Assembly (NCBI GenBank): GCA_002269645.1
Contig: NIVC01002976.1
Location: 62,001-126,000 of the forward strand
Direction: 5' to 3'
Source of the DNA: Macrostomum lignano
Taxonomy: Eukaryota
Length of the DNA: 64,000 bases
Shown: positions 641 through 64,000 of the stretch, in pieces
Layout: each line of letters opens with the position of its first letter
How positions within the stretch are numbered: position 1 is the stretch's first letter
Translations under genes and position numbers: made by a program
Notes under the pieces: model-generated
Seen by the model: the letters and a program-made list of their open reading frames with translations, nothing else
Databases searched by the model: none
What the model was told of the DNA's origin: nothing

Positions 641-6712
<6,072 letters not shown>

Positions 6713-15200: not shown

Positions 15201-18200
15201 CCCTGAACTACCTGAGGATTTAGTAGATGTCTGAACTACCTGAGGATTTAGTAGATGTCCTGAACTACCTGAGGATTTAGTAGATGTCCTGAACTACCTG
15301 AGGATTTCCCGTCTAAGGCACTGATGGTTGTTAAAGCTATTCACCTATATTTTTAAAAACTAAATTCATTCAATAAATTTACGCGTAGTTAGAAACTAGA
15401 AAACTAGAAATTCAAGCCTATGAAATTAAAGTCTTGAAAGCTTAGCAAGGTTGCCAGGTACGAGATTGTTTACCTTGGCAAGTGCATCAACCCCCTCTCA
15501 ATGCAACAGTTTTAACTAATGAATTCCATTTGCACACGGAATAGAAATTCTGAAAAGCGAAGTTAGTCAGTACTTTATAATACTGAATCCAGTTAGTTAA
15601 GCAAGGTAAATTATGAATGGGAATCTGCCTTTTTTCTCTTGCAACTTTATTAACTTTACAAGTTCATCAATTCCGCGTGGCAGAGATTTGCAATGTGCTT
15701 TGTAAATTTAGAAACTAAAAAACACAATTTGGAAACTTATAAAATTCCTTAGCTGTGTCTGGGGCTGAAACATTCAGGGAAAGAACGAATGCTGTGACAG
15801 ACTGAAACAGACAGTACGAGATTCCATGGAAGACACTATAAGACACTGAGACAAACACTGAGGCAGACACTGAGACAGACACTGAGACAGACATAAGACA
15901 GACACTGAGACAGACACTAAGACGGACACTGAGACAGGCACTGAGACAGGCACTGAGACAGACACTGAGACAGGCACTGAGACAGACACTGAGACAGGCA
16001 CTCAGACAGAAACTGAGACAGGCACTGAGACAGACACTGAGACAGACACTGAGACAGGCACTGAGACAGACATTGAGACAGACACTGAGACAGACACTGA
16101 GGACAGACACTGAGACAGACACTGAGACAGACACTGAGACAGACACTGAGACAGACACTGAGACAGACACTGAGACAGGCACTGAGACAGACACTGAGAC
16201 AGGCACTCAGACAGAAACTGAGACAGGCACTGAGACAGACACTGAGACAGACACTGAGACAGGCACTGAGACAGACATTGAGACAGACACTGAGACAGAC
16301 ACTGAGGACAGACACTGAGACAGACACTGAGACAGACACTGAGACAGACACTGAGACAGGCACTGAGACAGACACTGAGACAGGCACTGAGACAGAAACT
16401 GTGACAGACACTGAGACAGGCACTGAGACAGACACTGAGACAGACGCTGAGACAGGCACTGAGACAGACACTAAGACAGACACTGAGACAGACACTGAGA
16501 CAGGCACTGAGACAGGCACTGAGACAGACACTGAGACAGACGCTGAGACAGGCACTGAGACAGGCACTGAGACAGGCACTGAGACAGACACTGAGACAGG
16601 CACTGAGACAGAAACTGAGACAGACACTGAGACAGACACTGAGACAGACACTGAGACAGGCACTGAGACAGGCACTGTGACAGGCACTGAGACAGACAGG
16701 CACTGAGACAGGCACTGAGACAGACACTCAGACAGAAACTGTGACAGGCACTGAGACAGACACTCAGACAGAAACTGAGACAGGCACTGAAACAGACACT
16801 GAGACAGGCACTGAGACAGACACTGAGACAGACACTGAGACAGGCACTGAGACAGACTCTGAGACAGACACTGAGACAGACACTAAGGACAGACACTGAG
16901 ACAGGCACTGAAACAGACACAAGACAGGCACTGAGACAGAAACTGAGACAGACACTGAGACAGACACTGAGACAGACACTGAGACAGGCACTGAGACAGG
17001 CACTGTGACAGGCACTGAGACAGACAGGCACTGAGACAGGCACTGAGACAGACACTCAGACAGAAACTGTGACAGGCACTGAGACAGACACTCAGACAGA
17101 AACTGAGACAGGCACTGAAACAGACACTGAGACAGGCACTGAGACAGACACTGAGACAGAAACTGAGACAGGCACTGAGACAGACTCTGAGACAGACACT
17201 GAGACAGACACTAAGGACAGACACTGAGACAGGCACTGAAACAGACACAAGACAGACACTGAGACAGACACTGAGACAGACACTGAGACAGACACTGAGA
17301 CAGGCACTGAGACAGGCACTGAGACAGACACTGAGACAGGCACAAAGAAATACTAAGATAGACCCACCAGTGAACACAGGGTTCCAAGACAGCAGTAAGC
17401 CCCTCATACTTAGCGCAGAGAGATTGGTGCACCAGCCCCCTAAGCAAGGCAAACACGAGCGGGCTGCCTTCAGTGCAGGCCCGCTTCCTAACGCCAGTTA
17501 TTTGCGAAGTTCATCAAGCATTCACCGAAATTCTTTCCAACCCCCCGCCCGGCGCAGGCCCGCAGCGCCTGATCGACGCGTGCGAGCGCAAACGCCTCGA
17601 CTACGAGCGCGTCCTGCGCCGCTCCCAGCCCGACCCCATGGCCGAGGACGCGGCCAGGCAAGATTTCGCCGCCCTGAGCGGCCGACTCAAAGAGGAGCTG
17701 CCAGATTTGATCAGCTTGTCAATCCAGCTGCTGGTCAGGTCTGTTGTCTGCTTCCTGCGCTTGTTGCAGTCGGCCAGTACTCAAGCTCGTCTGCTTCTAA
17801 AAGAAGCTTTCCCAAGCGATAGCTGCGAGCTGACGCCCTTAATAGAGCAGGAACTGGACGCCTGGCTGCAGCGCTTGGCAGCTCTCCCGACTCTTGCCGA
17901 GGCCTCCCTACTGCAGGAAGTCGACGAAGAGTCCGCAGCTGACGGCGGCGGTGGCGACGAGGATGCGGCAGATTCGGCATCGCCCGCCACTCCGGGATTC
18001 CGGCCGGCTTCGGCGATCCGGCAGAGTGATGAGCTGCGGCAGCGGCTGGTCGGCAAGTACAAGATGTCCCAGCTGCGGCGGGTGGTCCGCGAGCATCTCG
18101 GCTGCTCCGCTAAACGAGAAGTGGACGCGTGCCAGGTGAGTGAGACAGGGTGGCTGATGGTGACGATGTCTCAAGTGACAGACCCATGGAGAGGGTAGTG

Positions 18201-20483: not shown

Positions 20484-28158
<7,675 letters not shown>

Positions 28159-33084: not shown

Positions 33085-34640
33085 GCAGTTGACAAACTTT
33101 TTACCTCAAATGCCAAAGGAGAGGAGAGAAGGAGATAAGGGAGAGGAGACAAGGGAGAGGAGAGAAGGGAGAGGAGACAAGGGAGAGGAGAGAAGGGAGA
33201 GGAGACAAGGGAGAGGAGAGAAGGGAGAGGAGAGAAGGGAGAGGAGAGAAGGGAGAGGAGAGAAGGGAGAGCAGAGAAGGGAGAGGAGACAAGGGAGAGG
33301 AGAGAAGGGAGAGGAGAGAAGGGAGAGGAGAGAAGGGAGAGGAGAGAAGGGAGAGGAGAGAAGGGAGAGGAGAGAAGGGAGAGGAGAGAAGGGAGAGGAG
33401 AGAAGGGAGAGGAGAGAAGGGAGAGGAGAGAAGGGAGAGGAGAGAAGGGAGAGGAGAGAAGGGAGAGGAGAGAAGGGAGAGCAGATAAGGGAGAGGAGAC
33501 AAGGGAGAGGAGAGAAGAGAGAGGAGAGAAGGGAGAGGAGAGAAGGGAGAGTAGAGAAGGGAGAGGAGAGAAGGGAGAGCAGATAAGGGAGAGGAGACAA
33601 GGGAGAGGAGAGAAGGGAGAGGAGACAAGGGAGAGGAGAGAAGGGAGAGGAGAGAAGGGAGAGGAGAGAAGGGAGAGGAGAGAAAGGAGAGGAGAGAAGG
33701 GAGAGTAGAGAGGGAGAGGAGAGAAGGGAGAGCAGAGAAGGGAGAGGAAAGAAGGGAGAGGAGACAAGGGAGAGGAGAGAAGAGAGAGGAGAGAAGGGAG
33801 AGGAGAGAAGGGAGAGTAGAGAAGGGAGAGGAGAGAAGGGAGAGCAGATAAGGGAGAGGAGACAAGGGAGAGGAGAGAAGGGAGAGGAGACAAGGGAGAG
33901 GAGAGAAGGGAGAGGAGAGAAGGGAGAGGAGAGAAGGGAGAGGAGAGAAAGGAGAGGAGAGAAGGGAGAGTAGAGAGGGAGAGGAGAGAAGGGAGAGCAG
34001 AGAAGGGAGAGGAAAGAAGGGAGAGGAGAGAAGGGAGAGGAGAGAAGGGAGAGGAGAGAAGGGAGAGGAGACAAGGGAGAGGAGAGAAGGGAGAGGAGAG
34101 AAGGGAGAGGAGAGAAGGGAGAGGAGAGAAGGGAGAGGAGAGAAGGGAGAGGAGAGAAGAGAGAGGAGAGAAGGGAGAGCAGATAAGGGAGAGGAGACAA
34201 GGGAGAGGAGAGAAGAGAGAGGAGAGAAGGGAGAGGAGACAAGGGAGAGGAGACAAGGGAGAGGAGAGAAGGGAGAGTAGAGAAGGGAGAGGAGAGAAGG
34301 GAGAGCAGAGAAGGGAGAGGAAAGAAGGGAGAGTAGAGAAGGGAGAGGAGAGAAGGGAGAGGAGAGAAGGGAGAGGAGAGAAGGGAGAGGAGAGAAGGGA
34401 GAGGAGAGAAGGGAGAGGAGACAAGGGAGAGGAGAGAAGGGAGAGGAGAGAAGGGAGAGCAGAGAAGGGAGAGGAGACAAGGGAGAGGAGAGAAGGAAGA
34501 GGAGAGAAGAGAGAGGAGAGAAGGGAGAGGAGAGAAGAGACACAAACCGTATGCGGGCCGGATTGCTATAGTGAAGTTTTTAAGGACACCTGAGGGCCGG
34601 ATGGAAAGGCTTGACAAGCCGGAGTTTGCCAACCCCTGGT
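33085..34640. mobile_element. GA-rich hAT-like MITE with ~1.4 kb expanded 14-bp GGAGAGAAGGGAGA array
   Basis: Ends GTTGACAAACTTTTTACCTCAAATGCCA and GGAGTTTGCCAACCCCTG. The paralogous copy at ~45090-45310 has only ~95 bp of repeat. Confidence 0.65.
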
Positions 34641-52013: not shown

Positions 52014-52734
52014 ATGCACAAAAACACAGTGTGCACAAACACACGGTGTGCACAAACACACGGTGTGCACAAACACACGGTGTGCACAAACACACGGTGT
52101 GCACAAACACGCGGTGTGCAAAAACACACGGTGTGCACAAACACACGGTGTGCACAAACACACGGTGTGCACAAACACACGGTGTGCACAAACACACAGT
52201 ATGCACAAACACACGGTATGCACAAACACACAGTATGCACAAACACACAGTATGCACAAACACACGGTGTGCACAAACACACGGTGTGCACAAACACACG
52301 GTGTGCACAAACACACAGTATGCACAAACACACGGTGTGCACAAACACACGGTGTGCACAAACACACGGTGTGCACAAACACACGGTGTGCACAAACACA
52401 CGGTGTGCACAAACACACGGTGTGCACAAACACACGGTGTGCACAAACACACGGTGTGCACAAACACACGGTATGCACAAACACACGGTATGCACAAACA
52501 CACGGTATGCACAAACACACGGTGTGCACAAACACACGGTATGCACAAACACACGGTATGCACAAACACGCGGTGTGCACAAACACACGGTGTGCACAAA
52601 CACACGGTGTGCACAAACACACGGTATGCACAAACACACGGTATGCACAAACACACGGTATGCACAAACACACGGTGTGCACAAACACACGGTATGCACA
52701 AACACACGGTATGCACAAACACGCGGTGTGCACA
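52014..52734. repeat. 17-bp satellite GCACAAACACACGGT(G/A)T, left of the retrotransposon
   Basis: Tandem array, interrupted at 52735. Confidence 0.98.
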
Positions 52735-52924
52735 AATGGCTAGTTTGCGCGGGCTGCGCTAACTGGCGTTTGTGTACGCTGCCCACCCCTGCCCCTCCCC
52801 GCGGCTTCCCCCCACCCCCGGTGTTGGGGGGGGGGGGTTGCGTGGCGGGGGTTTTATACCCCGCGGTTGGCTCTTTGGCCTCGCTGTCGCATTGCAATTG
52901 AAAAAATTTTTATGCTGCTGAGTC

Positions 52925-53956
52925 ATGTCACACGATTCTCTGACGGTACGAGAACTGCGCATGGCCTTGCGTGCTAAAGGCTTGCAAACCGTAGGCAACA
53001 AGCGCACCCTATTGGAGAGACTTCTGCAGTCTCAAGGCTCAGTGGACACGGGACCCATCGATGAATCGGACACCAGCAATCCATCGAGAAGGCGAGGGCC
53101 CGACGACGGGACGGCGGCGGTCGGCGGCGGCGAGGCGGCAGGAGGGACCCACGGGACTGGCGACCTGGACCGGGACCTGCGGGAGGCAGAGAAGCAGCTG
53201 CGCTTGCTGACAATTCGTCGGGACCAAGCGCGCCTGGAAGCCGAGATCCGTCAGCTGGACCGCCGTGCCGATGAGCCGCAGCGGCGACCTGCAAATGCCT
53301 CAGTGCCCGGTGAGTACTCAAGCCTTGAGGATTTAGTGCTGGGACCTACTGTCAGAGTGCCGGATGAGGTGCAGCAGGCGGGGCAGCAGCACCCGAATGC
53401 GTACCGGGTGCCGGAGTTCATCAGCGCTCGCAAGCGGCTGGCGCTGAACAAGTCAAGTCAAGCCAGCAAGCAGGCCGCCCTGGACAGCCTCTCGGTTGGC
53501 GACTGGATCACCGGAAACGCCAACGCGCTGATGCAGATGTTGAAGGACGGCAGACTCCTCGTCCTCCGTGATGGCGCTATCGACATGTCGGAGCTGCTGG
53601 AGTACCTGAAGCACACGGCAAAAATTGGCGACCTCCTTGATCTCGGATTCGACCGCGGCCGCGTTTTGCGCTATGATGATGAGTACAGAGCGCAGCACGC
53701 TGAGGCCGGCGCCTGGGACAGCTCGGTGACCGACCTGGGTCTGGTGGCGGCACACCTGATGGCTCCGAATCTTCAACTGCAGGCCGGCTCAGCGGGCAGG
53801 TCATCAGCAAAGCGACCGGTCTGCTTCGACTTCAACAAGGTGTCCGGCTGCCAGCGCAACCCGTGTCGTTTCGCACACAGTTGTAGGCGCTGCGGCCAGG
53901 CGCACTCGGAGGCCTCCTTCCACAGAGCGGAGGGCGGCCAGGCGGCAAAAAACTGA
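52925..53956 (+). CDS. ORF1 Gag-like protein: N-terminal SAP-like domain, coiled coil, C-terminal Cys/His knuckle
   Basis: LTVRELRMALRAKGLQTVGNKRTLLERL is SAP-like. CFDFNKVSGCQRNPCRFAHSCRRCGQAH is the Cys/His cluster. Confidence 0.88.
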   Translation: MSHDSLTVRELRMALRAKGLQTVGNKRTLLERLLQSQGSVDTGPIDESDTSNPSRRRGPDDGTAAVGGGEAAGGTHGTGDLDRDLREAEKQLRLLTIRRDQARLEAEIRQLDRRADEPQRRPANASVPGEYSSLEDLVLGPTVRVPDEVQQAGQQHPNAYRVPEFISARKRLALNKSSQASKQAALDSLSVGDWITGNANALMQMLKDGRLLVLRDGAIDMSELLEYLKHTAKIGDLLDLGFDRGRVLRYDDEYRAQHAEAGAWDSSVTDLGLVAAHLMAPNLQLQAGSAGRSSAKRPVCFDFNKVSGCQRNPCRFAHSCRRCGQAHSEASFHRAEGGQAAKN

Positions 53957-54044
53957 TGGACGGGGTTCAGCGGCAGGGGTCTCTTAACATCGAGTCGCCC
54001 GCCCCTGCCGCTGCTTCTGTCGAACCCCAAAAGGAGGGCGACTC
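53947..54044 (+). promoter_or_regulatory. Putative -1 programmed ribosomal frameshift signal (A AAA AAC + 8-nt spacer + pseudoknot)
   Basis: Heptamer at 53947-53953 is in the gag frame just before TGA. Complementary segments: 53962-67/54023-28, 53968-79/54002-13 and 53992-54000/54036-44. Confidence 0.72.
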
Positions 54045-55929
54045 AAGCGGGACCCTCTCCACCGACTTGCGCCTTGAAGCCTGGCGCCTCGAGCTGGCCG
54101 ACACGGAGATGCCAACGAAGCTCGCGCAGTTCGTTTTGAGCGGTGTGAAGGACGGTTTCCGCATCAGGAACGTCAGCAGTCCGGTGGACTCTGTCGAGCA
54201 GGAGAACTACGGCTCCATCGGTCAGCATCGAGTCGAGGTTCAGGCCCAAGTCCGCCGGGAACTGCAAGCTGGAAGATATCGCGTTAGCGCCAAGCCGACT
54301 ATTGTGAGCGCGCTGGGCGCCATTCCGAAGTCCGGGGGCGGCATCCGGCTCATCCATGACTGCAGTCAGCCCCAGGGTCGGGCCGTCAATGATTTGTTTG
54401 CTTGTCAGCAGAAGCTTCGGTTTTCTTCGGCGGCTGCCTTTGCTAGGAAGCTGCGCCAGGACATGTACATGTGTAAAGTTGACCTAAGCCAGGCCTACCG
54501 GTCTTGCGGCATTCACCCGGACGACCACTGCCTCACCGGTCTGAAGTTCACGTTCGAGGGCGAGGCGGAGCCGACCTACATGGTGGACACCCGGCTGCCG
54601 TTCGGAGCGGCAGCATCCGTGAGCAGCTTTTTCCAGATCAGCAACGCCATTCGGTTTATGATGCTCAAGCGCAGGTTCTTCAACTTCGAGGTCTACATGG
54701 ACGACTTCGGCTTCGCGGGTTCGCTGACTGAGTGCTGGCGCTTTTACAACAAGCTGACGCAGCTGCTGCAGAGCCTGGGCCTGACTGTCAACTGGAAGAA
54801 GTGCGTGCAGCCGACGCAGGAGATGTGCTTCCTGGGCATTCAGTTCAACACGCAGTCGGGGCTGATGAGTCTGCCAGAGACGAAGGTCGAGGAGCTGCAG
54901 GCCTGCCTTGACCTCTGCTGCACAAAGCGGCGGATCTCCAAGCACGAGTTGCAGAAGCTAGTGGGCAGGCTCAACTGGGCCTGTCAGGTGGTCTGCAACG
55001 GCCGGCCGTTTCTGCGAGACCTGATCGACCGCGTCAACGACTTGTCGAGCCCGAAGGATCGGCTGTTGGTGGATGGCCAGTTCAAGAGCGTCCTGAGCTG
55101 GTGGAAAGTTGCTCTGCGGCAGCAGCCAGGTCGCGAGCTCTGGCCTGCTGCCAGGAGGCCGGTTGCCATGGAGACGGACGCCTGTCTGGTGGGGGCAGCG
55201 GCTGTTCTGAGAGATCCGGCTGGTTCTGACTGGTGCTATCTGCAGTGGGAAGTCGACGCTGGGAGCGAGTTCAGCGATTGCTGCATCAACTACAAGGAGG
55301 CTGCCGCGGTGCTGCTGGCGTTGCTGCACTGGCGCCGTCAACTGCACAACTGCCGGATCGCTGTCTACTGCGACAATGCTGCAGCCTGCGCGATTATCAA
55401 CAAGGGGTCATCCAGGGAGCCCCGGCTGTTGCGGCTGCTGCAGACTGTTGCTCTGCTGTGCCTAAAGCAGAACATTGTGGTCACCGCCCACCATGTGCCC
55501 GGCCGGTTTCAGCTGTTTGCCGACGCCGCCTCCCGCCTGCATTGCCGGCAGGAGTTGCTGAATTTTCTGTTGCGAGCCTATGCAACCGCCTCTGTTTGCC
55601 CGCATGAATTTGCGGGACATGCGCTTAGCCCTGCCTCCGCCGCCTTTCTTTTTTTACAGGTCGCCTCCCTGGGTCTCTCGACGCTGCCGCCGCCAAACTG
55701 CTCCAGCAGGCCTATGCATCATCGTCCAAGAGGTCGCTGTCATCTGCTGTCCGCACCTGGCAACGCTTCTGCCGAGAGCGGCGGCTCGACCCACTCGGCT
55801 GTCGGGCGGAGGATCTCGCAAACTACGTCGGCCAGCTCGTGGACGGCCGGCTCAGCTCCTTCGGCAGCGTCCGCGTGCATATCAGCGCTCTGTCCGCCAG
55901 TTTCCGACTGGCGGGAGTGCCGGACCTGA
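53956..55929 (+). CDS. ORF2 reverse transcriptase + RNase H
   Basis: RT motifs KVDLSQAYR, RLPFG, YMDDF and FLGIQF. RNase H acidic residues in ETDAC, NYKEAAAV, YCDNAAA and FADAASR. The 3' ~270 nt overlap the YR frame. Confidence 0.95.
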   Translation: MDGVQRQGSLNIESPAPAAASVEPQKEGDSSGTLSTDLRLEAWRLELADTEMPTKLAQFVLSGVKDGFRIRNVSSPVDSVEQENYGSIGQHRVEVQAQVRRELQAGRYRVSAKPTIVSALGAIPKSGGGIRLIHDCSQPQGRAVNDLFACQQKLRFSSAAAFARKLRQDMYMCKVDLSQAYRSCGIHPDDHCLTGLKFTFEGEAEPTYMVDTRLPFGAAASVSSFFQISNAIRFMMLKRRFFNFEVYMDDFGFAGSLTECWRFYNKLTQLLQSLGLTVNWKKCVQPTQEMCFLGIQFNTQSGLMSLPETKVEELQACLDLCCTKRRISKHELQKLVGRLNWACQVVCNGRPFLRDLIDRVNDLSSPKDRLLVDGQFKSVLSWWKVALRQQPGRELWPAARRPVAMETDACLVGAAAVLRDPAGSDWCYLQWEVDAGSEFSDCCINYKEAAAVLLALLHWRRQLHNCRIAVYCDNAAACAIINKGSSREPRLLRLLQTVALLCLKQNIVVTAHHVPGRFQLFADAASRLHCRQELLNFLLRAYATASVCPHEFAGHALSPASAAFLFLQVASLGLSTLPPPNCSSRPMHHRPRGRCHLLSAPGNASAESGGSTHSAVGRRISQTTSASSWTAGSAPSAASACISALCPPVSDWRECRT

Positions 55930-56636
55930 CCAGGCACCCGCTGCTGCACCTGGTTCTGCGGGGAGCCAAGCGCGAGCTGGGGTCGGAGCCGAGTCGCAAG
56001 CTGCCGGTGTCGCCAGACCTTTTGTCGAGACTGCGGCTGCAAGTCGACAGCTCGAATCCTGTGCAGGCGGCCTGCTGGGCTGCGGTCATGTGCGCTTGGT
56101 GGGGGATGTTCAGGAAGTCCAGCCTGCTGCCGCGAGGGCGCGCCGATCCGCCAGTGCTGCGACTGAGCTCGCTGGCAAGATGCCCCGAAGGCCTGCTTCT
56201 GACGTCCAGCTTCGGGAAGACCAACCAGTACGGCCGGACGCATCGCGTGCTGCTGCCAGAGTTGACTTCGGGCCACCCGCTCTGTCCAGTGGCGGCACTG
56301 CGAGGCCACCTGCGCTGCAACCGGCTGAAGCGGCGGCAGCAGGGCCTGTTTTCATTCAGCAGTGGATCGTCCGGTCACGCATCTCTGACGTCCCGGAGGC
56401 TCGATGTACAGTTCAGGTCGTGGCTCGGCAAGGCGGGAGTTCCGGCGGCCGGGTTTTCTGTGCATAGCCTGCGGCGAGGCGCCGCCACCTGGGCGGCCCG
56501 GTGCGGCCTGTCAGTGCGGGAGATCCAGTGCGTGGGTGACTGGCGCAGCGATGCAGTGAGCGTCTACCTGTCCCGCGATGACACGGCTCTGCGTGCGGCG
56601 CGCAAGCTTGCTGTTGCGGCGCTTGACCAAACCTGA
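55660..56636 (+). CDS. ORF3 tyrosine recombinase (frame open from 55629; no upstream ATG; probably entered by splicing at 55660)
   Basis: Catalytic set present: FRKS (R), GKTNQ (K), HSLRR (HxxR), GDW (W) and VYL (Y). An N-terminal core-binding region YASSSKRSLSSAVRTWQRFC lies upstream of the listed GTG start. Confidence 0.92.
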
Positions 56637-57240
56637 CGTGTTTCGCGGTTTTTTTTTGAAGAAAGGTTTTGGGCTCCTTTTTTGTTTGCTTGTCCGCTTT
56701 TGCTTGCCTCTGCTTGGTCTGCTTTTGCTCTAGTCTGTTTTCTTGCTGCTTTTGGTGTTGGGGGGAGTGCATGGCAGCCTTCCCTGACCTCCTCGCTGTT
56801 CCTGCGCCATTTGCTGCTCTTGAGCTTGCTGCGTTCGTCTTCTGGGGTGGGCAGTGGGCACTAATGGCTAGTTTGCGCGGGATGCGCTAACTGGCGTTTG
56901 TGTACGCTGCCCACCCCTGCCCCTCCCCCGCGGCTTCCCCCACCCCCGGTGTTGGGGGGGGGGTTGCGTGGCGGGGGGTTTTATACCCCGCGGTTGGCTC
57001 TTTGGCCTCGCTGTCGCATTGCAATTGAAAAAAATTTTTTTTCGTATCCTGTCACTCTTTTAATCCTGCTTTGATCCGTTCTAACTGTTGTCAATAATGC
57101 TTGAATATTTTCTCGTAATCGGTCTGAAATATACGGGGGGGAGTGCATGGCAGCCTTCCCTGACCTCCTCGCTGTTCCTGCGCCATTTGCTGCTCTTGAG
57201 CTTGCTGCGTTCGTCTTCTGGGGTGGGCAGTGGGCACTAA

Positions 57241-60200
57241 CAAACGGTATGCACAAACACACGGTATGCACAAACACACGGTGTGCTCAAACACACGGTA
57301 TGCACAAACAAACGGTGTGCACAAACACACGGTATGCACAAACACACGGTGTGCACAAACACACGGTGTGCACAAACACATGGTGTGCACAAACACACGG
57401 TGTGCACAAACACACGGTATGCACAAACACACGGTGTGCACAAACACACGGTGTGCACAAACACACGGTATGCACAAACACACGGTGTGCACAAACACGC
57501 GGTGTGCACAAACACACGGTATGCACAAACACACGGTGTGCTCAAACACACGGTGTGCTCAAACACACGGTTTGCACAAACACACGGTATGCACAAACAC
57601 ACGGTGTGCTCAAATACACGGTGTGCACAAACACACGGTATGCACAAACACACGGTGTGCTCAAACACACGGTGTGCACAAACACACGGTGTGCACAAAC
57701 ACGCGGTGTGCACAAACACACGGTATGCACAAACACACGGTGTGCTCAAACACACGGTATGCACAAACACACGGTATGCACAAACACACGGTGTGCACAA
57801 ACACATGGTGTGCACAAACACACGGTGTGCACAAACACACGGTATGCACAAACACACGGTGTGCACAAACACACGGTGTGCACAAACACACGGTATGCAC
57901 AAACACACGGTGTGCACAAACACGCGGTGTGCACAAACACACGGTATGCACAAACACACGGTGTGCTCAAACACACGGTGTGCTCAAACACACGGTTTGC
58001 ACAAACACACGGTATGCACAAACACACGGTGTGCTCAAATACACGGTGTGCACAAACACACGGTGTGCACAAACACGCGGTATGCACAAACACACGGTGT
58101 GCACAAACACACGGTATGCACAAACACACGGTGTGCACAAACACACGGTGTGCACAAACAAACGGTATGCACAAACACATGGTGTGCACAAACACACGGT
58201 GTGCACAAACACGCGGTGTGCACAAACACACGGTGTGCACAAACAAACGGTATGCACAAACACACGGTGTGTACAAACACACGGTATGCACAAACACACG
58301 GTGTGCACAAACACACGGTGTGCACAAACACACGGTATGCACGAACACACGGTGTGCTCAAACACACGGTTTGCACAAACACACGGTGTGCACAAACACA
58401 CGGTGTGCACAAACACACGGTATGCACAAACACACGGTGTGCACAAACACACGGTGTGCACAAACACGCGGTGTGCACAAACACACGGTGTGCACAAACA
58501 AACGGTATGCACAAACACACGGTGTGTACAAACACACGGTATGCACAAACACACGGTGTGCACAAACACACGGTGTGTACAAACACACGGTGTGCACAAA
58601 CACACGGTGTGCACAAACACACGGTGTGCACAAACACGCGGTGTGCACAAACACACGGTGTGCACAAACACACGGTGTGCACAAACACACGGTGTGCACA
58701 AACAAACGGTATGCACAAACACATGGTGTGTACAAACACACAGTGTGCACAAAAACACGGTGTGCACAAACACACGGTGTGCACAAACACACGGTATGCA
58801 CGAACACACGGTGTGCTCAAACACACGGTTTGCACAAACACACGGTATGCACAAACACACGGTGTGCTCAAACACACGGTGTGCACAAACACACGGTGTG
58901 CACAAACACGCGGTATGCACAAACACGCGGTGTGCACAAACACACGGTATGCACAAACACACGGTGTGCACAAACACACGGTGTGCACAAACACACGGTA
59001 TGGACAAACACATGGTGTGCACAAACACACGGTGTGCACAAACACGCGGTGTGCACAAACACATGGTGTGCACAAACACACGGTGTGCTCAAACACACGG
59101 TGTGCTCAAACACACGGTGTGCACAAACACGCGGTGTGCACAAACACACGGTGTGCACAAACAAACGGTATGCACAAACACACGGTGTGTACAAACACAC
59201 GGTATGCACAAACACACGGTGTGCACAAACACACGGTGTGCACAAACACACGGTATGCACGAACACACGGTGTGCTCAAACACACGGTTTGCACAAACAC
59301 ACGGTGTGCACAAACACACGGTGTGCACAAACACACGGTATGCACAAACACACGGTGTGCACAAACACACGGTGTGCACAAACACGCGGTGTGCACAAAC
59401 ACACGGTGTGCACAAACAAACGGTATGCACAAACACACGGTGTGTACAAACACACGGTATGCACAAACACACGGTGTGCACAAACACACGGTGTGTACAA
59501 ACACACGGTGTGCACAAACACACGGTGTGCACAAACACACGGTGTGCACAAACACGCGGTGTGCACAAACACACGGTGTGCACAAACACACGGTGTGCAC
59601 AAACACACGGTGTGCACAAACAAACGGTATGCACAAACACATGGTGTGTACAAACACACGTGTGCACAAAAACACGGTGTGCACAAACACACGGTGTGCA
59701 CAAACACACGGTATGCACAACACACGGTGTGCTCAAACACACGGTTTGCACAAACACACGGTATGCACAAACACACGGTGTGCTCAAACACACGGTGTGC
59801 ACAAACACACGGTGTGCACAAACACGCGGTATGCACAAACACGCGGTGTGCACAAACACACGGTATGCACAAACACACGGTGTGCACAAACACACGGTGT
59901 GCACAAACACACGGTATGGACAAACACATGGTGTGCACAAACACACGGTGTGCACAAACACGCGGTGTGCACAAACACATGGTGTGCACAAACACACGGT
60001 GTGCACAAACACGCGGTGTGCACAAACACACGGTGTGCACAAACAAACGGTATGCAAAAACACACGGTGTGTACAAACGCACGGTATGCACAAACACACG
60101 GTATGCACAAACAAACGGTATGCACAAACACACGGTATGCACAAACACACGGTATGCACAAACACACGGTATGCACAAACACACGGTGTGCACAAACACA

Positions 60201-63200
60201 CGGTATGCACAAACACACGGTGTGCACAAACACATGGTGTGCACAAACACACGGTGTGCACAAACACACGGTATGCACAAACACACGGTGTGCACAAACA
60301 CACGGTGTGCACAAACACACGGTATGCACAAACACACGGTGTGCACAAACACACGGTGTGCTCAAACACACGGTATGCACAAACACACGGTGTGCACAAA
60401 CACACGGTATGCACAAACACACGGTATGCACAAACACACGGTGTGCACAAACACATGGTGTGCACAAACACACGGTGTGCACAAACACACGGTATGCACA
60501 AACACACGGTGTGCACAAACACACGGTGTGCACAAACACACGGTATGCACAAACACACGGTGTGCACAAACACGCGGTGTGCACAAACACACGGTATGCA
60601 CAAACACACGGTGTGCACAAACACACGGTGTGCTCAAACACACGGTTTGCACAAACACACGGTATGCACAAACACACGGTGTGCTCAAACACACGGTGTG
60701 CACAAACACACGGTGTGCACAAACACGCGGTATGCACAAACACGCGGTGTGCACAAACACACGGTATGCACAAACACACGGTGTGCACAAACACACGGTG
60801 TGCACAAACAAACGGTATGCACAAACACATGGTGTGCACAAACACACGGTGTGCACAAACACGCGGTGTGCACAAACACACGGTGTGCACAAACAAACGG
60901 TATGCACAAACACACGGTGTGTACAAACACACGGTATGCACAAACACATGGTGTGCACAAACACACGGTGTGCACAAACACACGGTATGCACAAACACAC
61001 GGTGTGCACAAACACACGGTGTGCACAAACACACGGTATGCACAAACACACGGTGTGCACAAACACGCGGTGTGCACAAACACACGGTATGCACAAACAC
61101 ACGGTGTGCTCAAACACACGGTGTGCTCAAACACACGGTTTGCACAAACACACGGTATGCACAAACACACGGTGTGCTCAAATACACGGTGTGCACAAAC
61201 ACACGGTGTGCACAAACACGCGGTATGCACAAACACGCGGTGTGCACAAACACACGGTATGCACAAACACACGGTGTGCACAAACACACGGTGTGCACAA
61301 ACAAACGGTATGCACAAACACATGGTGTGCACAAACACACGGTGTGCACAAACACGCGTGTGCACAAACACACGGTGTGCACAAACAAACGGTATGCACA
61401 AACACACGGTGTGTACAAACACACGGTATGCACAAACACACGGTGTGCACAAACACACGGTGTGCACAAACACACGGTATGCACAAACACACGGTGTGCT
61501 CAAACACACGGTATGCACAAACACACGGTGTGCACAAACACACGGTGTGCACAAACACACGGTATGCACAAACACACGGTGTGCACAAACACACGGTGTG
61601 CACAAACACGCGGTGTGCACAAACACACGGTGTGCACAAACAAACGGTATGCACAAACACACGGTGTGTACAAACACACGGTATGCACAAACACACGGTG
61701 TGCACAAACACACGGTGTGTACAAACACACGGTGTGCACAAACACACGGTGTGCACAAACACACGGTGTGCACAAACACGCGGTGTGCACAAACACACGG
61801 TATGCACAAACACACGGTGTGCACAAACACACGGTGTGCACAAACAAACGGTATGCACTAACACATGGTGTGTACAAACACACGGTGTGCACAAAACACG
61901 GTGTGCACAAACACACGGTGTGCACAAACACACGGTATGCACAACACACGGTGTGCTCAAACACACGGTTGCACAAACACACGGTATGCACAAACACACG
62001 GTGTGCACAAACACACGGTGTGCACAAACACACGGTGTGCACAAACACGCGGTATGCACAAACACGCGGTGTGCACAAACACACGGTATGCACAAACACA
62101 CGGTGTGCACAAACACACGGTGTGCACAAACACACGGTATGGACAAACACATGGTGTGCACAAACACACGGTGTGCACAAACACGCGGTGTGCACAAACA
62201 CATGGTGTGCACAAACACACGGTGTGCACAAACACGCGGTGTGCACAAACACACGGTGTGCACAAACAAACGGTATGCACAAACACACGGTGTGTACAAA
62301 CGCACGGTATGCACAAACACACGGTATGCACAAACAAACGGTATGCACAAACACACGGTATGCACAAACACACGGTATGCACAAACACACGGTATGCACA
62401 AACACACGGTGTGCACAAACACACGGTATGCACAAACACACGGTGTGCACAAACACATGGTGTGCACAAACACACGGTGTGCACAAACACACGGTATGCA
62501 CAAACACACGGTGTGCACAAACACACGGTGTGCACAAACACACGGTATGCACAAACACATGGTGTGCTCAAACACACGGTGTGCTCAAACACACGGTATG
62601 CACAAACACACGGTGTGCTCAAACACACGGTATGCACAAACACACGGTATGCACAAACACACGGTGTGCACAAACACATGGTGTGCACAAACACACGGTG
62701 TGCACAAACACACGGTATGCACAAACACACGGTGTGCACAAACACACGGTGTGCACAAACACACGGTATGCACAAACACACGGTGTGCACAAACACGCGG
62801 TGTGCACAAACACACGGTATGCACAAACACACGGTGTGCTCAAACACACGGTGTGCTCAAACACACGGTTTGCACAAACACACGGTATGCACAAACACAC
62901 GGTGTGCTCAAACACACGGTGTGCACAAACACACGGTGTGCACAAACACGCGGTATGCACAAACACGCGGTGTGCACAAACACACGGTATGCACAAACAC
63001 ACGGTGTGCACAAACACACGGTGTGCACAAACAAACGGTATGCACAAACACATGGTGTGCACAAACACACGGTGTGCACAAACACGCGGTGTGCACAAAC
63101 ACACGGTGTGCACAAACAAACGGTATGCACAAACACACGGTGTGTACAAACACACGGTATGCACAAACACACGGTGTGCACAAACACACGGTTTGCACAA

Positions 63201-64000
63201 ACACACGGTGTGCACAAACACACGGTATGCACAAACACACGGTATGCACAAACACACGGTGTGCACAAACACACGGTGTGCACAAACACACGGTGTGCAC
63301 AAACACACGGTGTGCACAAACAAACGGTATGCACAAACACACGGTGTGTACAAACACACGGTATGCACAAACAAACGGTATGCACAAACACACGGTATGC
63401 ACAAACACACGGTATGCACAAACACACGGTATGCACAAACACACGGTGTGCACAAACACACGGTATGCACAAACACACGGTATGCACAAACAAACGGTGT
63501 GCACAAACACACGGTGTGCTCAAACACACGGTGTGCACAAACACACGGTGTGCACAAACACACGGTGTGCACAAACACACGGTGTGCACAAACACACGGT
63601 GTGCACAAACACACGGTGTGCACAAACACGCGGTATGCACAAACACGCGGTGTGCACAAACACACGGTATGCACAAACACACGGTATGCACAAACAAACG
63701 GTGTGCACAAACACACGGTGTGCACAAACACACGGTGTGCACAAACACACGGTGTGCACAAACACACGGTGTGCACAAACACACGGTGTGCACAAACACG
63801 CGGTATGCACAAACACGCGGTGTGCACAAACACACGGTATGCACAAACACACGGTATGCACAAACACACGGTATGCACAAAAACACGGTATGCTCAAACA
63901 CACGGTGTGCACAAACACACGGTGTGCACAAACACGCGGTGTGCACAAACACACGGTATGCACAAACACACGGTGTGCTCAAACACACGGTATGCACAAA
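57241..64000. repeat. 17-bp satellite array (>6.7 kb, runs off the window) with higher-order structure
   Basis: Same unit as 52014-52734. It is the source of all the HTVCTNTR and VFVHTVCLC ORFs. Confidence 0.99.

What the first reader, a model, noticed from the sequence alone, without database searches (positions are those of the whole stretch)
53309..55660. Retrotransposon appears to splice its Gag SAP domain onto the ATG-less tyrosine recombinase
Seen: the YR frame is bounded by TAG at 55626-28, and its N-terminal core-binding region has no ATG. Just upstream is a strong acceptor, CTTTCTTTTTTTACAG|G (AG 55658-59), embedded in the post-RNaseH tail of ORF2. Inside gag is a consensus donor CCG|GTGAGT (exon end 53309). 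Both sites are phase 1, so removing 53310-55659 (2350 nt) joins ...ANASVP-G-RLPGSLDAAAAKLLQQAY... in frame, giving ~453 aa: SAP domain + coiled coil + complete recombinase. Established: SAP domains bind DNA/chromatin. Inference: the integrase is a spliced chimera carrying a DNA-tethering module, a way to express the third ORF that I do not know to be described for Ngaro elements.
Basis: partly seen in the sequence, partly recalled or inferred. Interest (0 to 1): 0.88.

Follow-up and report, generated by a model that had tools for sequence, protein, structure and literature searches.

The report
Spliced Gag–recombinase fusion in Ngaro retrotransposon
A tyrosine-recombinase (Ngaro-type) retrotransposon carries a conserved splice donor in gag and a conserved acceptor at the start of its start-codon-less recombinase gene, so the recombinase is probably made from a spliced mRNA as a fusion to the DNA-binding front end of Gag, much as retroviruses make their third gene.

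Summary
In one copy this is not beyond chance, since about one GTGAG is expected per gag ORF.

The support comes from relatives:
- The donor sits at the homologous gag codon, phase 1, in all four related families that include gag. It lies in a variable, indel-rich linker and uses a minority xGT codon.
- A pyrimidine tract plus CAG|G/A marks the first recombinase codon, phase 1, in all seven families. In each it is the top-ranked acceptor of its contig.

The same T-run is a canonical, correctly phased -1 frameshift heptamer (T TTT TTA). It is absent from all relatives and has no downstream structure. The gag/pol junction, by contrast, has a conserved A AAA AAC heptamer and a conserved stem-loop.

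No RNA evidence could be obtained. No about-450-aa SAP–recombinase protein exists in the protein collections searched.

This would be a new variant of retrovirus-like subgenomic splicing. I found no description of it for DIRS/Ngaro elements.

The parts
52737..57240 (+). Complete Ngaro-type element inserted in a 17-bp satellite, with no target-site duplication
   Evidence: Self-BLAST of repeats. The satellite is continuous across the flanks. Domains.
52737..52911 (+). A1 split direct repeat (copy A2 at 56865-57038, 96% identical)
56760..56864 (+). B1 split direct repeat (copy B2 at 57136-57240, 100% identical)
52925..53956 (+). ORF1, Gag-like, 343 aa. It has an N-terminal SAP domain (aa 5-35), a disordered linker, a long helix/coiled coil (aa ~78-116), the gag core and a C-terminal Cys/His motif
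   Evidence: Helix prediction (low-confidence model).
52925..53309 (+). Proposed exon 1 coding part: Gag aa 1-128 plus the first base of codon 129 (SAP + coiled coil)
53307..53315 (+). 5' splice site CCG|GTGAGT, phase 1. It is the best-scoring GT in the element and is conserved in 4 of 4 families
53310..55659 (+). Proposed 2350-nt intron (rest of gag, gag/pol frameshift site, RT, RNase H)
   Evidence: Inferred from the conserved sites.
53947..53953 (+). A AAA AAC -1 slippery heptamer, in gag phase, directly before the gag TGA. This is the gag-pol frameshift site
   Evidence: Conserved in L001 and L004.
53962..54028 (+). Stem-loop downstream of the gag/pol heptamer (dG -38.3 kcal/mol, z = -3.46), conserved with compensatory changes
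53956..55929 (+). ORF2, RT + RNase H. It is -1 relative to gag. Protein-level constraint ends at about 55659; the last 90 codons are an unconstrained read-through of the YR gene
55626..55628 (+). TAG closing the YR frame upstream. It is also the nearest AG upstream of the acceptor (30-nt AG-free zone) and a possible branch-point region, CTTAGC
55630..55659 (+). Pyrimidine tract (85% C/T in -20..-1) plus CAG: the 3' splice site, phase 1 in the YR frame. Rank 1 of 268 AGs
55650..55656 (+). T TTT TTA: canonical -1 slippery heptamer in ORF2 phase leading into the YR frame (rival or additional route). Not conserved in relatives
55660..56636 (+). Proposed exon 2 coding part: a complete Cre-like tyrosine recombinase (N-terminal core-binding-type domain and catalytic domain with HSLRRG, GDWRS and a Tyr in VSVYL), stop TGA at 56634-56636

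Best explanation
The element expresses its three genes in a retrovirus-like way.

1. The unspliced RNA is the genome and the mRNA for Gag.
2. Pol (RT-RNase H) is made as Gag-Pol by -1 ribosomal frameshifting at A AAA AAC plus a stem-loop. This is shown by sequence and conservation.
3. The recombinase has no start codon of its own. It is translated from a singly spliced subgenomic mRNA of about 2.1 kb. The spliceosome would join the gag donor (53309|53310) to the acceptor at the first recombinase codon (55659|55660). Translation starts at the gag AUG and gives a protein of 453 aa (about 50 kDa). That protein consists of the SAP domain, a disordered linker, the coiled-coil helix, a short linker and a complete Cre-like recombinase.

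The sites, their phases and their conservation are shown. Their use by the spliceosome is inferred.

What the Gag N-terminus does for the recombinase is speculative. It may supply the AUG, bind DNA or chromatin through SAP, and drive oligomerisation or co-assembly with Gag through the shared coiled coil.
For: (1) The join is in frame, both sites phase 1.

(2) The donor xGT|GAG is invariant at the homologous codon in 4 of 4 families sharing 41-72% amino-acid identity.
- Window: CCC G|GT GAG TAC.
- L001: CCC T|GT GAG TAC.
- L008: CCC G|GT GAG TTG.
- L007: CAC G|GT GAG CTT.
- The encoded residue changes (Gly to Cys in L001) while the GT is kept.
- The flanking linker is variable and full of indels.
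- GGT makes up only 14-25% of Gly codons, and L001's TGT 30% of Cys codons. The joint probability of these codon choices is 6e-4 if the families are treated as independent.

(3) The acceptor (pyrimidine tract + CAG|G/A) is phase 1 in the YR frame in 7 of 7 families. In every contig it is the rank-1 AG by pyrimidine content (0.80-0.90). The AG-free zone upstream is 30-155 nt in the six contigs where it was measured.

(4) The donor is the rank-1 GT in three of four families and rank 6 of 251 in the fourth.

(5) The YR frame lacks ATG before the catalytic domain in the window and in L001.

(6) Window-versus-L001 substitutions switch codon periodicity at the acceptor. Upstream, ORF2 third positions vary most (18 versus 8 and 6 at positions 1 and 2). 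Downstream, YR third positions vary most (38 versus 21 and 14).

(7) Exon 2 starts where a Cre-like protein starts: query residue 16 aligns with Cre residue 34. The junction falls in a predicted unstructured linker (low confidence).

(8) The rival frameshift signal is not conserved, and the element's genuine frameshift site looks quite different.

(9) A Macrostomum lignano gene model (UniRef A0A1I8G0Z6) joins upstream sequence to the recombinase exactly at G|RLP.
Against: - No RNA evidence. No protein of about 450 aa with SAP followed by YR was found in 5.8 billion clustered or 1.84 billion representative proteins. The two transcript-or-DNA contigs of the sibling family are unspliced.
- The pyrimidine tract overlaps a pol-tail peptide motif (S..[AS]FL..Q) that also occurs in distant relatives. 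Part of its conservation could therefore be protein-level.
- One distant relative (P0050/L009) encodes RT-RH-YR as one ORF, collinear with a -1 fusion here. A Pol-YR fusion is therefore a viable design.
- This copy does carry an in-phase T TTT TTA.
- Both sites look strong, which raises the question of how enough unspliced genomic RNA would survive.
- The families are related, so their agreement is not fully independent.
- The host and its splicing preferences are unknown.
Confidence: 0.6

Rival explanations
1. The recombinase is made by -1 programmed ribosomal frameshifting at T TTT TTA (55650-55656). This would give a Pol-YR fusion (894 aa from the ORF2 start) or Gag-Pol-YR. The splice-like motifs would then be by-products of coding constraints.
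For: - The heptamer is canonical, it is the only in-phase one in ORF2, and it lies 21 nt after the YR-frame stop.
- YR is -1 to ORF2 in all SAP-clade families examined.
- The resulting fusion is collinear with the single-ORF RT-RH-YR protein P0050, with spacing from FL to RFC of 43 versus 46 aa.
- The element already uses -1 frameshifting at gag/pol.
- The literature notes that Ngaro YR ORFs can be in frame with, or frameshifted relative to, RT-RH (PMC3783388).
Against: - No usable in-phase XXXYYYZ heptamer exists near the junction in the six related families (L001, L005, L003, L007, L008, L012). L007's two lie about 100 nt upstream, inside the conserved LLNFLLR pol motif. All of these families keep the same ORF arrangement.
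- The 64-104 nt downstream fold less stably than shuffled sequence (z = +1.15 and +1.53). The gag/pol site, by contrast, has a conserved -38 kcal/mol stem-loop.
- This model does not explain the conserved gag GTGAG or the matching phases.
Confidence: 0.15
2. The conserved acceptor is used, but not with the gag donor. It could serve spliced-leader trans-splicing (if the host is a flatworm) or pair with another donor. Alternatively the recombinase is translated without splicing, by non-AUG initiation, reinitiation or internal entry.
For: - The closest named relatives are from the flatworm Macrostomum lignano, a group with SL trans-splicing (own knowledge).
- M. lignano gene models join different upstream sequences to the YR.
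- Acceptor conservation (7 of 7 families) is broader than what could be tested for the donor (4 of 4).
Against: - Flatworm spliced leaders end in AUG (own knowledge). AUG|GUC GCC would read the ORF2 frame, not the YR frame (frames).
- Trans-splicing does not explain a conserved, top-ranked, phase-matched donor in gag.
- No conserved in-frame near-cognate start codon was noted in the 10 codons between the TAG and the acceptor.
Confidence: 0.1
3. Nothing functional is here. The GTGAG and the pyrimidine-rich CAG are conserved only because they encode Gly/Cys-Glu in Gag and FLxxQ in the Pol tail. The recombinase would then be supplied in trans or poorly expressed.
For: - About one GTGAG per gag ORF is expected by chance.
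- P-G-E is also seen at the protein level in P0127.
- The FLxx[QR] tail motif extends to distant relatives.
Against: - The Gly-to-Cys change in L001 keeps the GT, a minority codon (GGT or TGT) is used in all four families, and the linker around it is variable.
- The residues before Q interchange among F, L, S, H and P. These are pyrimidine-rich codons rather than conservative amino-acid replacements.
- The sites are rank 1 in their contigs.
- All ORFs are intact in several diverged families, which implies that the recombinase is expressed somehow.
Confidence: 0.1

Closest known systems
Murine leukemia virus SD' RNA / P50 protein (PMC10496198)
   Same: An alternative splice donor inside gag is joined to an acceptor in pol. 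Translation from the gag AUG gives the N-terminal part of Gag fused in frame to integrase sequence.
   Different: P50 carries only the last 116 aa of a DDE integrase and is an accessory protein; the functional integrase comes from Gag-Pol. Here the whole tyrosine recombinase would be made this way, apparently as its main or only route, in a non-LTR-type YR retrotransposon.
Retroviral singly spliced subgenomic mRNA for the third gene (env). In avian sarcoma/leukosis viruses the gag AUG and first codons are spliced onto env (own knowledge).
   Same: Unspliced RNA gives Gag and Gag-Pol by recoding. One splice from a donor at or inside gag gives the third protein, using the gag start codon.
   Different: The third gene here is the integration enzyme, not an envelope protein. 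The exon 1 contribution is 128 aa with folded domains (SAP, coiled coil), not a few codons.
Foamy virus Pol expressed separately from Gag (PMC3196705; from a spliced mRNA, own knowledge)
   Same: The enzyme is not made as a Gag fusion by recoding. It comes from its own mRNA and so needs its own way into particles.
   Different: Foamy virus Pol uses its own AUG and carries no Gag sequence.
-1 programmed ribosomal frameshifting at gag-pol (for example U UUU UUA in HIV-1; own knowledge)
   Same: An identical heptamer, correctly phased, lies at the pol/YR junction of this copy. The element's gag/pol junction is a textbook case (A AAA AAC + stem-loop).
   Different: At pol/YR there is no stimulatory structure and no conservation of the heptamer.
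Described Ngaro elements (Goodwin & Poulter 2004, as cited in PMC8547959, PMC3783388 and PMC9210276)
   Same: A1-[gag, RT/RH, YR]-B1A2B2 structure, overlapping ORFs, and a YR either in frame with or frameshifted from RT-RH.
   Different: The held papers I searched with the terms intron, splic* or frameshift and two full-text searches describe no splicing route for the YR and no SAP-Gag/YR fusion. The original Ngaro paper is not held in the library.
Spliced subgenomic RNAs of plant LTR retrotransposons (BARE, PMC3735527; Ty1/Copia, PMC5580714)
   Same: Retrotransposons use host splicing to partition expression of their proteins.
   Different: In those elements splicing adjusts the Gag to Pol ratio. 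It does not create a Gag-integrase chimera.

Membership tests
Ngaro-type YR retrotransposon (order DIRS) | Encodes RT + RNase H and a tyrosine recombinase, with no protease, DDE integrase or methyltransferase | tested here: met
   Pfam finds RVT_1 and RT_RNaseH in ORF2 and Phage_integrase in ORF3, with no other domains. Cre matches at E = 1e-5.
Ngaro-type YR retrotransposon (order DIRS) | Split direct repeats A1-[ORFs]-B1-A2-B2 | tested here: met
   A1 52737-52911 matches A2 56865-57038 (96%). B1 56760-56864 equals B2 57136-57240 (100%). A 97-bp spacer lies between A2 and B2.
Ngaro-type YR retrotransposon (order DIRS) | Integration without target-site duplication | tested here: met
   The 17-bp satellite unit continues across the insertion with one mismatch and no duplicated bases.
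Ngaro-type YR retrotransposon (order DIRS) | RT/RH groups phylogenetically with named Ngaro elements | not tested
   Homologues found carry no family names and no tree was built.
Spliceosomal intron / spliced subgenomic mRNA | Consensus 5' splice site GTRAGT | tested here: met
   CCG|GTGAGT, rank 1 of 242 GTs by a generic position weight matrix.
Spliceosomal intron / spliced subgenomic mRNA | Pyrimidine tract + YAG 3' splice site with an AG-free zone | tested here: met
   85% pyrimidine in -20..-1, CAG|G, 30 nt without AG, rank 1 of 268 AGs.
Spliceosomal intron / spliced subgenomic mRNA | Sites and reading-frame compatibility conserved in diverged relatives | tested here: met
   Donor in 4 of 4 families and acceptor in 7 of 7, all phase 1.
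Spliceosomal intron / spliced subgenomic mRNA | Recognisable branch point | tested here: inconclusive
   CTTAGC lies 32 nt upstream in the window and L001. Visual inspection of the seven upstream sequences showed no motif shared by all.
Spliceosomal intron / spliced subgenomic mRNA | Junction present in RNA, cDNA or protein | not testable with these tools
   No read data available. No SAP-YR chimera of about 450 aa in the protein collections. The contigs of the sibling family are unspliced.
-1 programmed ribosomal frameshift site (at pol/YR) | X XXY YYZ heptamer in the zero-frame phase, with the -1 frame open | tested here: met
   T TTT TTA at 55650-55656, with ORF2 codons TTT TTA.
-1 programmed ribosomal frameshift site (at pol/YR) | Stimulatory stem-loop or pseudoknot 5-9 nt downstream | tested here: not met
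   MFE z = +1.15 (64 nt) and +1.53 (104 nt). Pseudoknots were not assessed.
-1 programmed ribosomal frameshift site (at pol/YR) | Signal conserved in relatives with the same ORF arrangement | tested here: not met
   No usable in-phase heptamer in the six other families. L007's two lie about 100 nt upstream, inside a conserved pol motif.
-1 programmed ribosomal frameshift site (at gag/pol, for comparison) | Heptamer + spacer + conserved structure | tested here: met
   A AAA AAC at 53947-53953. Stem-loop of -38.3 kcal/mol, z = -3.46, with compensatory pairs.
SAP domain (PF02037) | Pfam score above the gathering threshold | tested here: met
   29.4 bits against a 23.9 cutoff, Gag residues 5-35. 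Also SAP in L001's gag and P0127.
Cre-like tyrosine recombinase | Two-domain architecture and catalytic R..HxxR..[H/W]..Y | tested here: inconclusive
   Pfam gives 21.3 bits, below the 27.1 cutoff. Cre matches both the N-terminal domain (residues 16-107) and the HxxR/W region (263-306) at E = 1e-5. The motifs FRKSS, HSLRRG, GDWRS and VYL were read directly.

The most novel reading that the evidence does not exclude
A whole clade of animal Ngaro retrotransposons may express the tyrosine recombinase only from a retrovirus-like spliced subgenomic mRNA, as a fusion to the SAP/coiled-coil head of Gag. The clade has at least seven families, including flatworm elements, and could be much wider. On this reading the conserved 'pol-tail motif' (FLxxQ / LLPQ) seen across many metazoan Ngaro pol proteins is really a 3' splice site. 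YR retrotransposons would then have arrived, independently of retroviruses, at the same three-gene expression logic: unspliced RNA plus recoding plus one splice.
Probability: 0.45. Interest if true: 0.75.

Novelty: new variant of a known kind. Interest (0 to 1): 0.66.

Why it matters
How DIRS/Ngaro elements express overlapping or start-less recombinase ORFs has been left open in the literature I could search. Those papers say only that the ORFs "overlap" or are "frameshifted".

A conserved gag-to-YR splice would matter in four ways.
- It would give a concrete mechanism that can be tested directly.
- It would show convergence with retroviral subgenomic splicing and with the MLV Gag-IN chimera P50.
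- It would predict a recombinase carrying a DNA/chromatin-binding SAP domain and the Gag coiled coil. That bears on how the enzyme reaches particles or target chromatin.
- It would change how such elements should be annotated. Current ORF callers truncate the recombinase at internal GTG or ATG codons, as seen in P0001-P0004.

Tried and rejected
- Other copies in the window: none. Only the element's own repeats matched.
- Exact-protein look-up of Gag to identify the source genome: not on record.
- Metagenome scan with an ORF2 alignment: one distant locus at 21% identity, not useful.
- IMG/VR scan: nothing.
- Search for a spliced SAP-YR product. I tried the YR query, an exhaustive HMMER search of 1.84 billion representatives and a profile of three predicted chimeras. 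None returned a chimera of about 450 aa. The only protein with both SAP and YR is P0127, which also contains the gag core and about 90 aa of RT.
- P0127 could not be traced to DNA. I cannot tell whether its junction at the acceptor is a predicted intron, a transcript-supported intron or a genomic deletion.
- L002 looked as if it might be a spliced transcript, but it is identical to the unspliced L001.
- L004 is an internally deleted copy whose breakpoints are not the splice sites.
- Stimulatory structure downstream of T TTT TTA: none.
- Rfam scan of the element: only sub-threshold miRNA noise in the satellite.
- AlphaFold on the single chimeric sequence: poor model (mean pLDDT 43). I used it only for secondary-structure hints.
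- Literature: the original Ngaro description is not held in the library. I found no paper linking Ngaro or DIRS with splicing of the YR.
- Spliced-leader trans-splicing was considered and set aside, because an SL-terminal AUG would be in the wrong frame.
- Extension to cnidarian-type relatives (L009, L010) is only suggestive. Donor ranks are 3 and 1, acceptor ranks 3 and 8. The sites are in phase in L010 only, and the GE there lies in a conserved peptide.


Full report
**What is there.** Window 52737-57240 (+) is one intact Ngaro-type tyrosine-recombinase retrotransposon.
- Its split direct repeats are A1 52737-52911, B1 56760-56864, A2 56865-57038 and B2 57136-57240.
- It sits inside a 17-bp satellite that continues on both sides without a target-site duplication.
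- ORF1 (52925-53956) is a Gag-like protein with an N-terminal SAP domain (Pfam 29.4 bits against a 23.9 cutoff).
- ORF2 (53956-55929) carries RVT_1 and RT_RNaseH.
- The third frame (open 55629-56636) carries a Phage_integrase match. It aligns with Cre recombinase over both the N-terminal domain and the HxxR/W/Y region (E = 1e-5).

**Check of the observation.**
- TAG at 55626-55628 closes the recombinase frame upstream.
- That frame has no ATG, GTG or TTG before 55839.
- The donor is CCG|GTGAGT, with the exon ending at 53309.
- The acceptor is CTTTCTTTTTTTACAG|G, with AG at 55658-55659.
- Both sites are phase 1. Deleting 53310-55659 gives a 453-aa ORF with the junction ...SVP-G-RLPGSL....

On its own the donor is not surprising. 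Synonymous shuffles of gag contain 0.92 GTGAG on average, 0.51 of them in phase 1. Within the element, however, these two sites are the best-scoring GT (rank 1 of 242) and the best-scoring AG (rank 1 of 268).

The recombinase frame is -1 relative to ORF2. TTTTTTA at 55650-55656 is a canonical X XXY YYZ slippery heptamer in the correct ORF2 phase (codons TTT TTA), 21 nt after the YR-frame stop. Slippage there would give an 894-aa RT-RH-YR fusion.

This matters because the element clearly uses -1 frameshifting at gag/pol.
- A AAA AAC (53947-53953) lies in gag phase directly before the gag TGA.
- ORF2 is -1 to gag.
- A stem-loop follows at 53962-54028 (-38.3 kcal/mol, z = -3.46).
- That stem-loop is conserved, with compensatory changes, in two other families.

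**Relatives.** Protein searches and contig look-ups gave six further families with the same plan. All have the YR -1 to pol.

| Locus | Source | YR identity to window | Content |
|---|---|---|---|
| L001 / L002 | Logan | 72% | About 70% nt identity; full gag, pol and YR |
| L005 | JGI | 52% | Pol tail and YR |
| L003 | JGI | 41% | Part of pol, and YR |
| L007 | JGI | not measured | Gag, pol and part of YR |
| L008 | Logan | not measured | Gag and pol |
| L012 | Logan | not measured | Pol and YR |

The nearest named relatives are Macrostomum lignano (flatworm) proteins. The host is therefore probably an invertebrate of that kind. It was not identified.

**Test of the donor.** In all four families with gag sequence, the homologous codon pair is xGT GAG in phase 1.

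| Family | Sequence |
|---|---|
| Window | CCC G\|GT GAG TAC |
| L001 | CCC T\|GT GAG TAC |
| L008 | CCC G\|GT GAG TTG |
| L007 | CAC G\|GT GAG CTT |

- The site lies in the linker between the coiled coil and the gag core. That linker is poorly conserved and full of indels.
- In L001 the amino acid changes (Gly to Cys) while the GT is kept.
- GGT is a minority Gly codon in these GC-rich elements (14-25%), and L001's TGT is 30% of Cys codons. Given the amino acids, the codon choices have a joint probability of about 6e-4 if the families are independent. They are related, so the real figure is less extreme.
- The donor is the rank-1 GT in the window, L007 and L008, and rank 6 of 251 in L001.

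**Test of the acceptor.**
- In all seven families a pyrimidine tract (80-90% C/T over -20..-1) ends in CAG|G, or CAG|A in L012. It falls exactly at the first conserved recombinase codon, in phase 1 of the YR frame.
- The AG-free stretch upstream is 30-155 nt in the six contigs where it was measured.
- It is the rank-1 AG in every contig.
- Donor and acceptor are therefore phase-compatible in all four families where both are available.

**Test of the frameshift rival.**
- None of the six other families has an in-phase XXXYYYZ heptamer near the junction.
- L007 has two, about 100 nt upstream. They lie inside the conserved LLNFLLR pol motif, and slippage there would discard the conserved pol tail.
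- The 64 or 104 nt after the window's heptamer fold less stably than shuffled sequence (z = +1.15 and +1.53).
- The pol/YR heptamer thus fails two of the three features that the gag/pol site meets.
- Low-level slippage on T TTT TTA in this particular copy cannot be excluded.

**Where the coding frames swap.**
- Between the window and L001, differences upstream of the acceptor fall mostly on ORF2 third positions (18, against 8 and 6 at positions 1 and 2).
- Downstream they fall mostly on YR third positions (38, against 21 and 14).
- The ORF2-frame tail is 50% identical, against 73% for the YR frame.
- ORF2's extension beyond the acceptor varies from 8 to 90 or more codons among families.
- Pol function therefore ends, and recombinase function begins, at the acceptor. 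This fits splicing or frameshifting at that point.
- Exon 2 begins about 18 residues before the position aligned to Cre residue 34, which is at the natural N-terminus of a Cre-like enzyme.
- A low-confidence single-sequence model (mean pLDDT 43) predicts two short SAP helices, a disordered stretch and a long helix at 78-116. It places the junction in an unstructured linker before the first recombinase helix at 134.

**Evidence that cuts the other way.**
1. No transcript evidence was found. No SAP-YR protein of about 450 aa appears in the searches, and the sibling-family contigs are unspliced.
2. The pyrimidine tract also encodes a pol-tail motif (S..[AS]FL..Q). Counterparts such as FLLSR and LLPQ occur in distant cnidarian- and hemichordate-type relatives. 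However, the residues that vary there interchange among F, L, S, P, H and C. All of these use pyrimidine-rich codons. That pattern is what a nucleotide-level constraint would give, rather than a protein-level one.
3. One distant relative (P0050/L009) has gag-TGA-pol-YR in a single frame, collinear with the -1 fusion here. A Pol-YR fusion is therefore a workable design.
4. In a neighbouring distant family (L010) the YR is +1 to pol. An acceptor-like TTCCAG|AT (phase 1) and a gag G|GTGAG (phase 1) are again compatible. There, however, the GE lies in a conserved peptide and the acceptor ranks only 8 of 278.
5. Both sites look strong, so how enough unspliced genomic RNA would be preserved is unexplained.

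**The M. lignano gene models.**
- The best YR relative overall is P0127 (UniRef A0A1I8G0Z6, 'SAP domain-containing protein', 758 aa). It consists of Gag, about 90 residues of the RT N-terminus and then the recombinase. The last join is exactly at ...SALG|RLPATP..., which is the acceptor position.
- P0011 (A0A1I8HAA6) joins the Gag coiled coil to RT-RH and then to the YR.
- Their DNA was not retrievable. I cannot say whether these joins are predicted introns, transcript-supported introns or genomic deletions.
- They show that the acceptor is recognisable in a further family. They do not show that it is used.

**Most likely mechanism.**
- The unspliced RNA serves as genome and as mRNA for Gag and, by -1 frameshifting, Gag-Pol. 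This is shown by signals and conservation.
- A single splice from 53309 to 55660 gives a subgenomic mRNA of about 2.1 kb. Translation of it starts at the gag AUG and yields SAP - linker - coiled coil - recombinase (453 aa). This is inferred from conserved, top-ranked, phase-matched sites.
- The functional rationale is speculation: provision of the start codon, DNA or chromatin binding by SAP, and oligomerisation or co-assembly with Gag through the shared coiled coil.
- I put this at about 0.6. Frameshifting as the main route gets 0.15, another route to the acceptor or to translation 0.1, and no function 0.1.

**Comparison with what is known.**
- The logic is that of simple retroviruses: unspliced RNA plus recoding for Gag and Gag-Pol, and one splice for the third gene.
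- The nearest specific precedent is MLV P50. There a donor inside gag is spliced to an acceptor in pol, giving N-terminal Gag fused in frame to the last 116 residues of integrase (PMC10496198). P50 is an accessory protein; here the whole integration enzyme would be made this way.
- For Ngaro/DIRS elements, the papers I could search say only that ORFs overlap, or that the YR is in frame or frameshifted (PMC3783388, PMC3266345, PMC9210276). No paper found mentions splicing of the YR.
- The original Ngaro paper is not held in the library, so prior description cannot be fully excluded.
- I rate this a new variant of a known kind.

**Verdict.** Interest is about 0.66.

Noticed in passing
window 53947-54028: The gag/pol junction is a textbook -1 frameshift site. 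A AAA AAC lies in gag phase directly before the gag TGA, and ORF2 is -1. A stem-loop follows (-38.3 kcal/mol, z = -3.46). Both are conserved in L001 and L004, with compensatory pairs.
   Followed up: yes
L007 1533-1545; L008 1107-1119: In two sister families gag and pol share one frame, separated by a single TGA followed by CTA or CTC. This is a stop-codon read-through arrangement rather than frameshifting. The clade has therefore switched recoding mechanism at gag/pol while keeping the splice-like sites.
   Followed up: partly
window 52723-52740 and 57225-57250: The element is inserted in the 17-bp satellite without a target-site duplication. The end of the B repeat (GTGGGCACTAA) resembles the satellite sequence at the insertion point (GTGTGCACAAA). 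A recombinase needing short homology between the B/A junction of a circular intermediate and its target would produce this.
   Followed up: partly
L004 1-1429: An internally deleted relative. The gag end and about 100 codons of ORF2 are joined to the recombinase about 24 codons after the acceptor. The breakpoints are not the splice sites, and the YR is left without a start codon or acceptor. It is probably a dead or non-autonomous copy.
   Followed up: partly
P0127 (UniRef A0A1I8G0Z6) and P0011 (A0A1I8HAA6), Macrostomum lignano: These flatworm gene models fuse Gag parts to RT and YR parts. One junction falls exactly at the acceptor position (G|RLP). The underlying DNA and RNA support could not be retrieved.
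   Followed up: partly
pol C-termini of P0012-P0101; L009 5456-5473; L010 3508-3525: Many metazoan Ngaro-like pol proteins end with HMS...(F/L)L(L/S/P)(Q/R), built from pyrimidine-rich codons followed by CAG or C-AGA. Two related YR proteins that I fetched (P0131, P0133) begin without Met. The splice design may reach far beyond this clade.
   Followed up: partly
window 1-52000 and 57230-64000: Much of the rest of the window is tandem arrays: 30 TRF rows, some overlapping. Examples are (ATCT)n at 2802-4666, 24-mers at 5392-6155 and 10760-12613, a 12-mer at 15841-17343, a 16-mer at 22783-23745, a 14-mer at 33117-34537 and the 17-mer at 57230-64000. Long 'ORFs' there are repeat artefacts with no credible Pfam match. 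This looks like a heterochromatic or satellite-rich region.
   Followed up: no
window 57039-57135: A unique AT-rich spacer of about 97 bp separates A2 from B2. The canonical description is B1-A2-B2 without a spacer. A1 and A2 are 96% identical with indels, while B1 and B2 are 100% identical.
   Followed up: no
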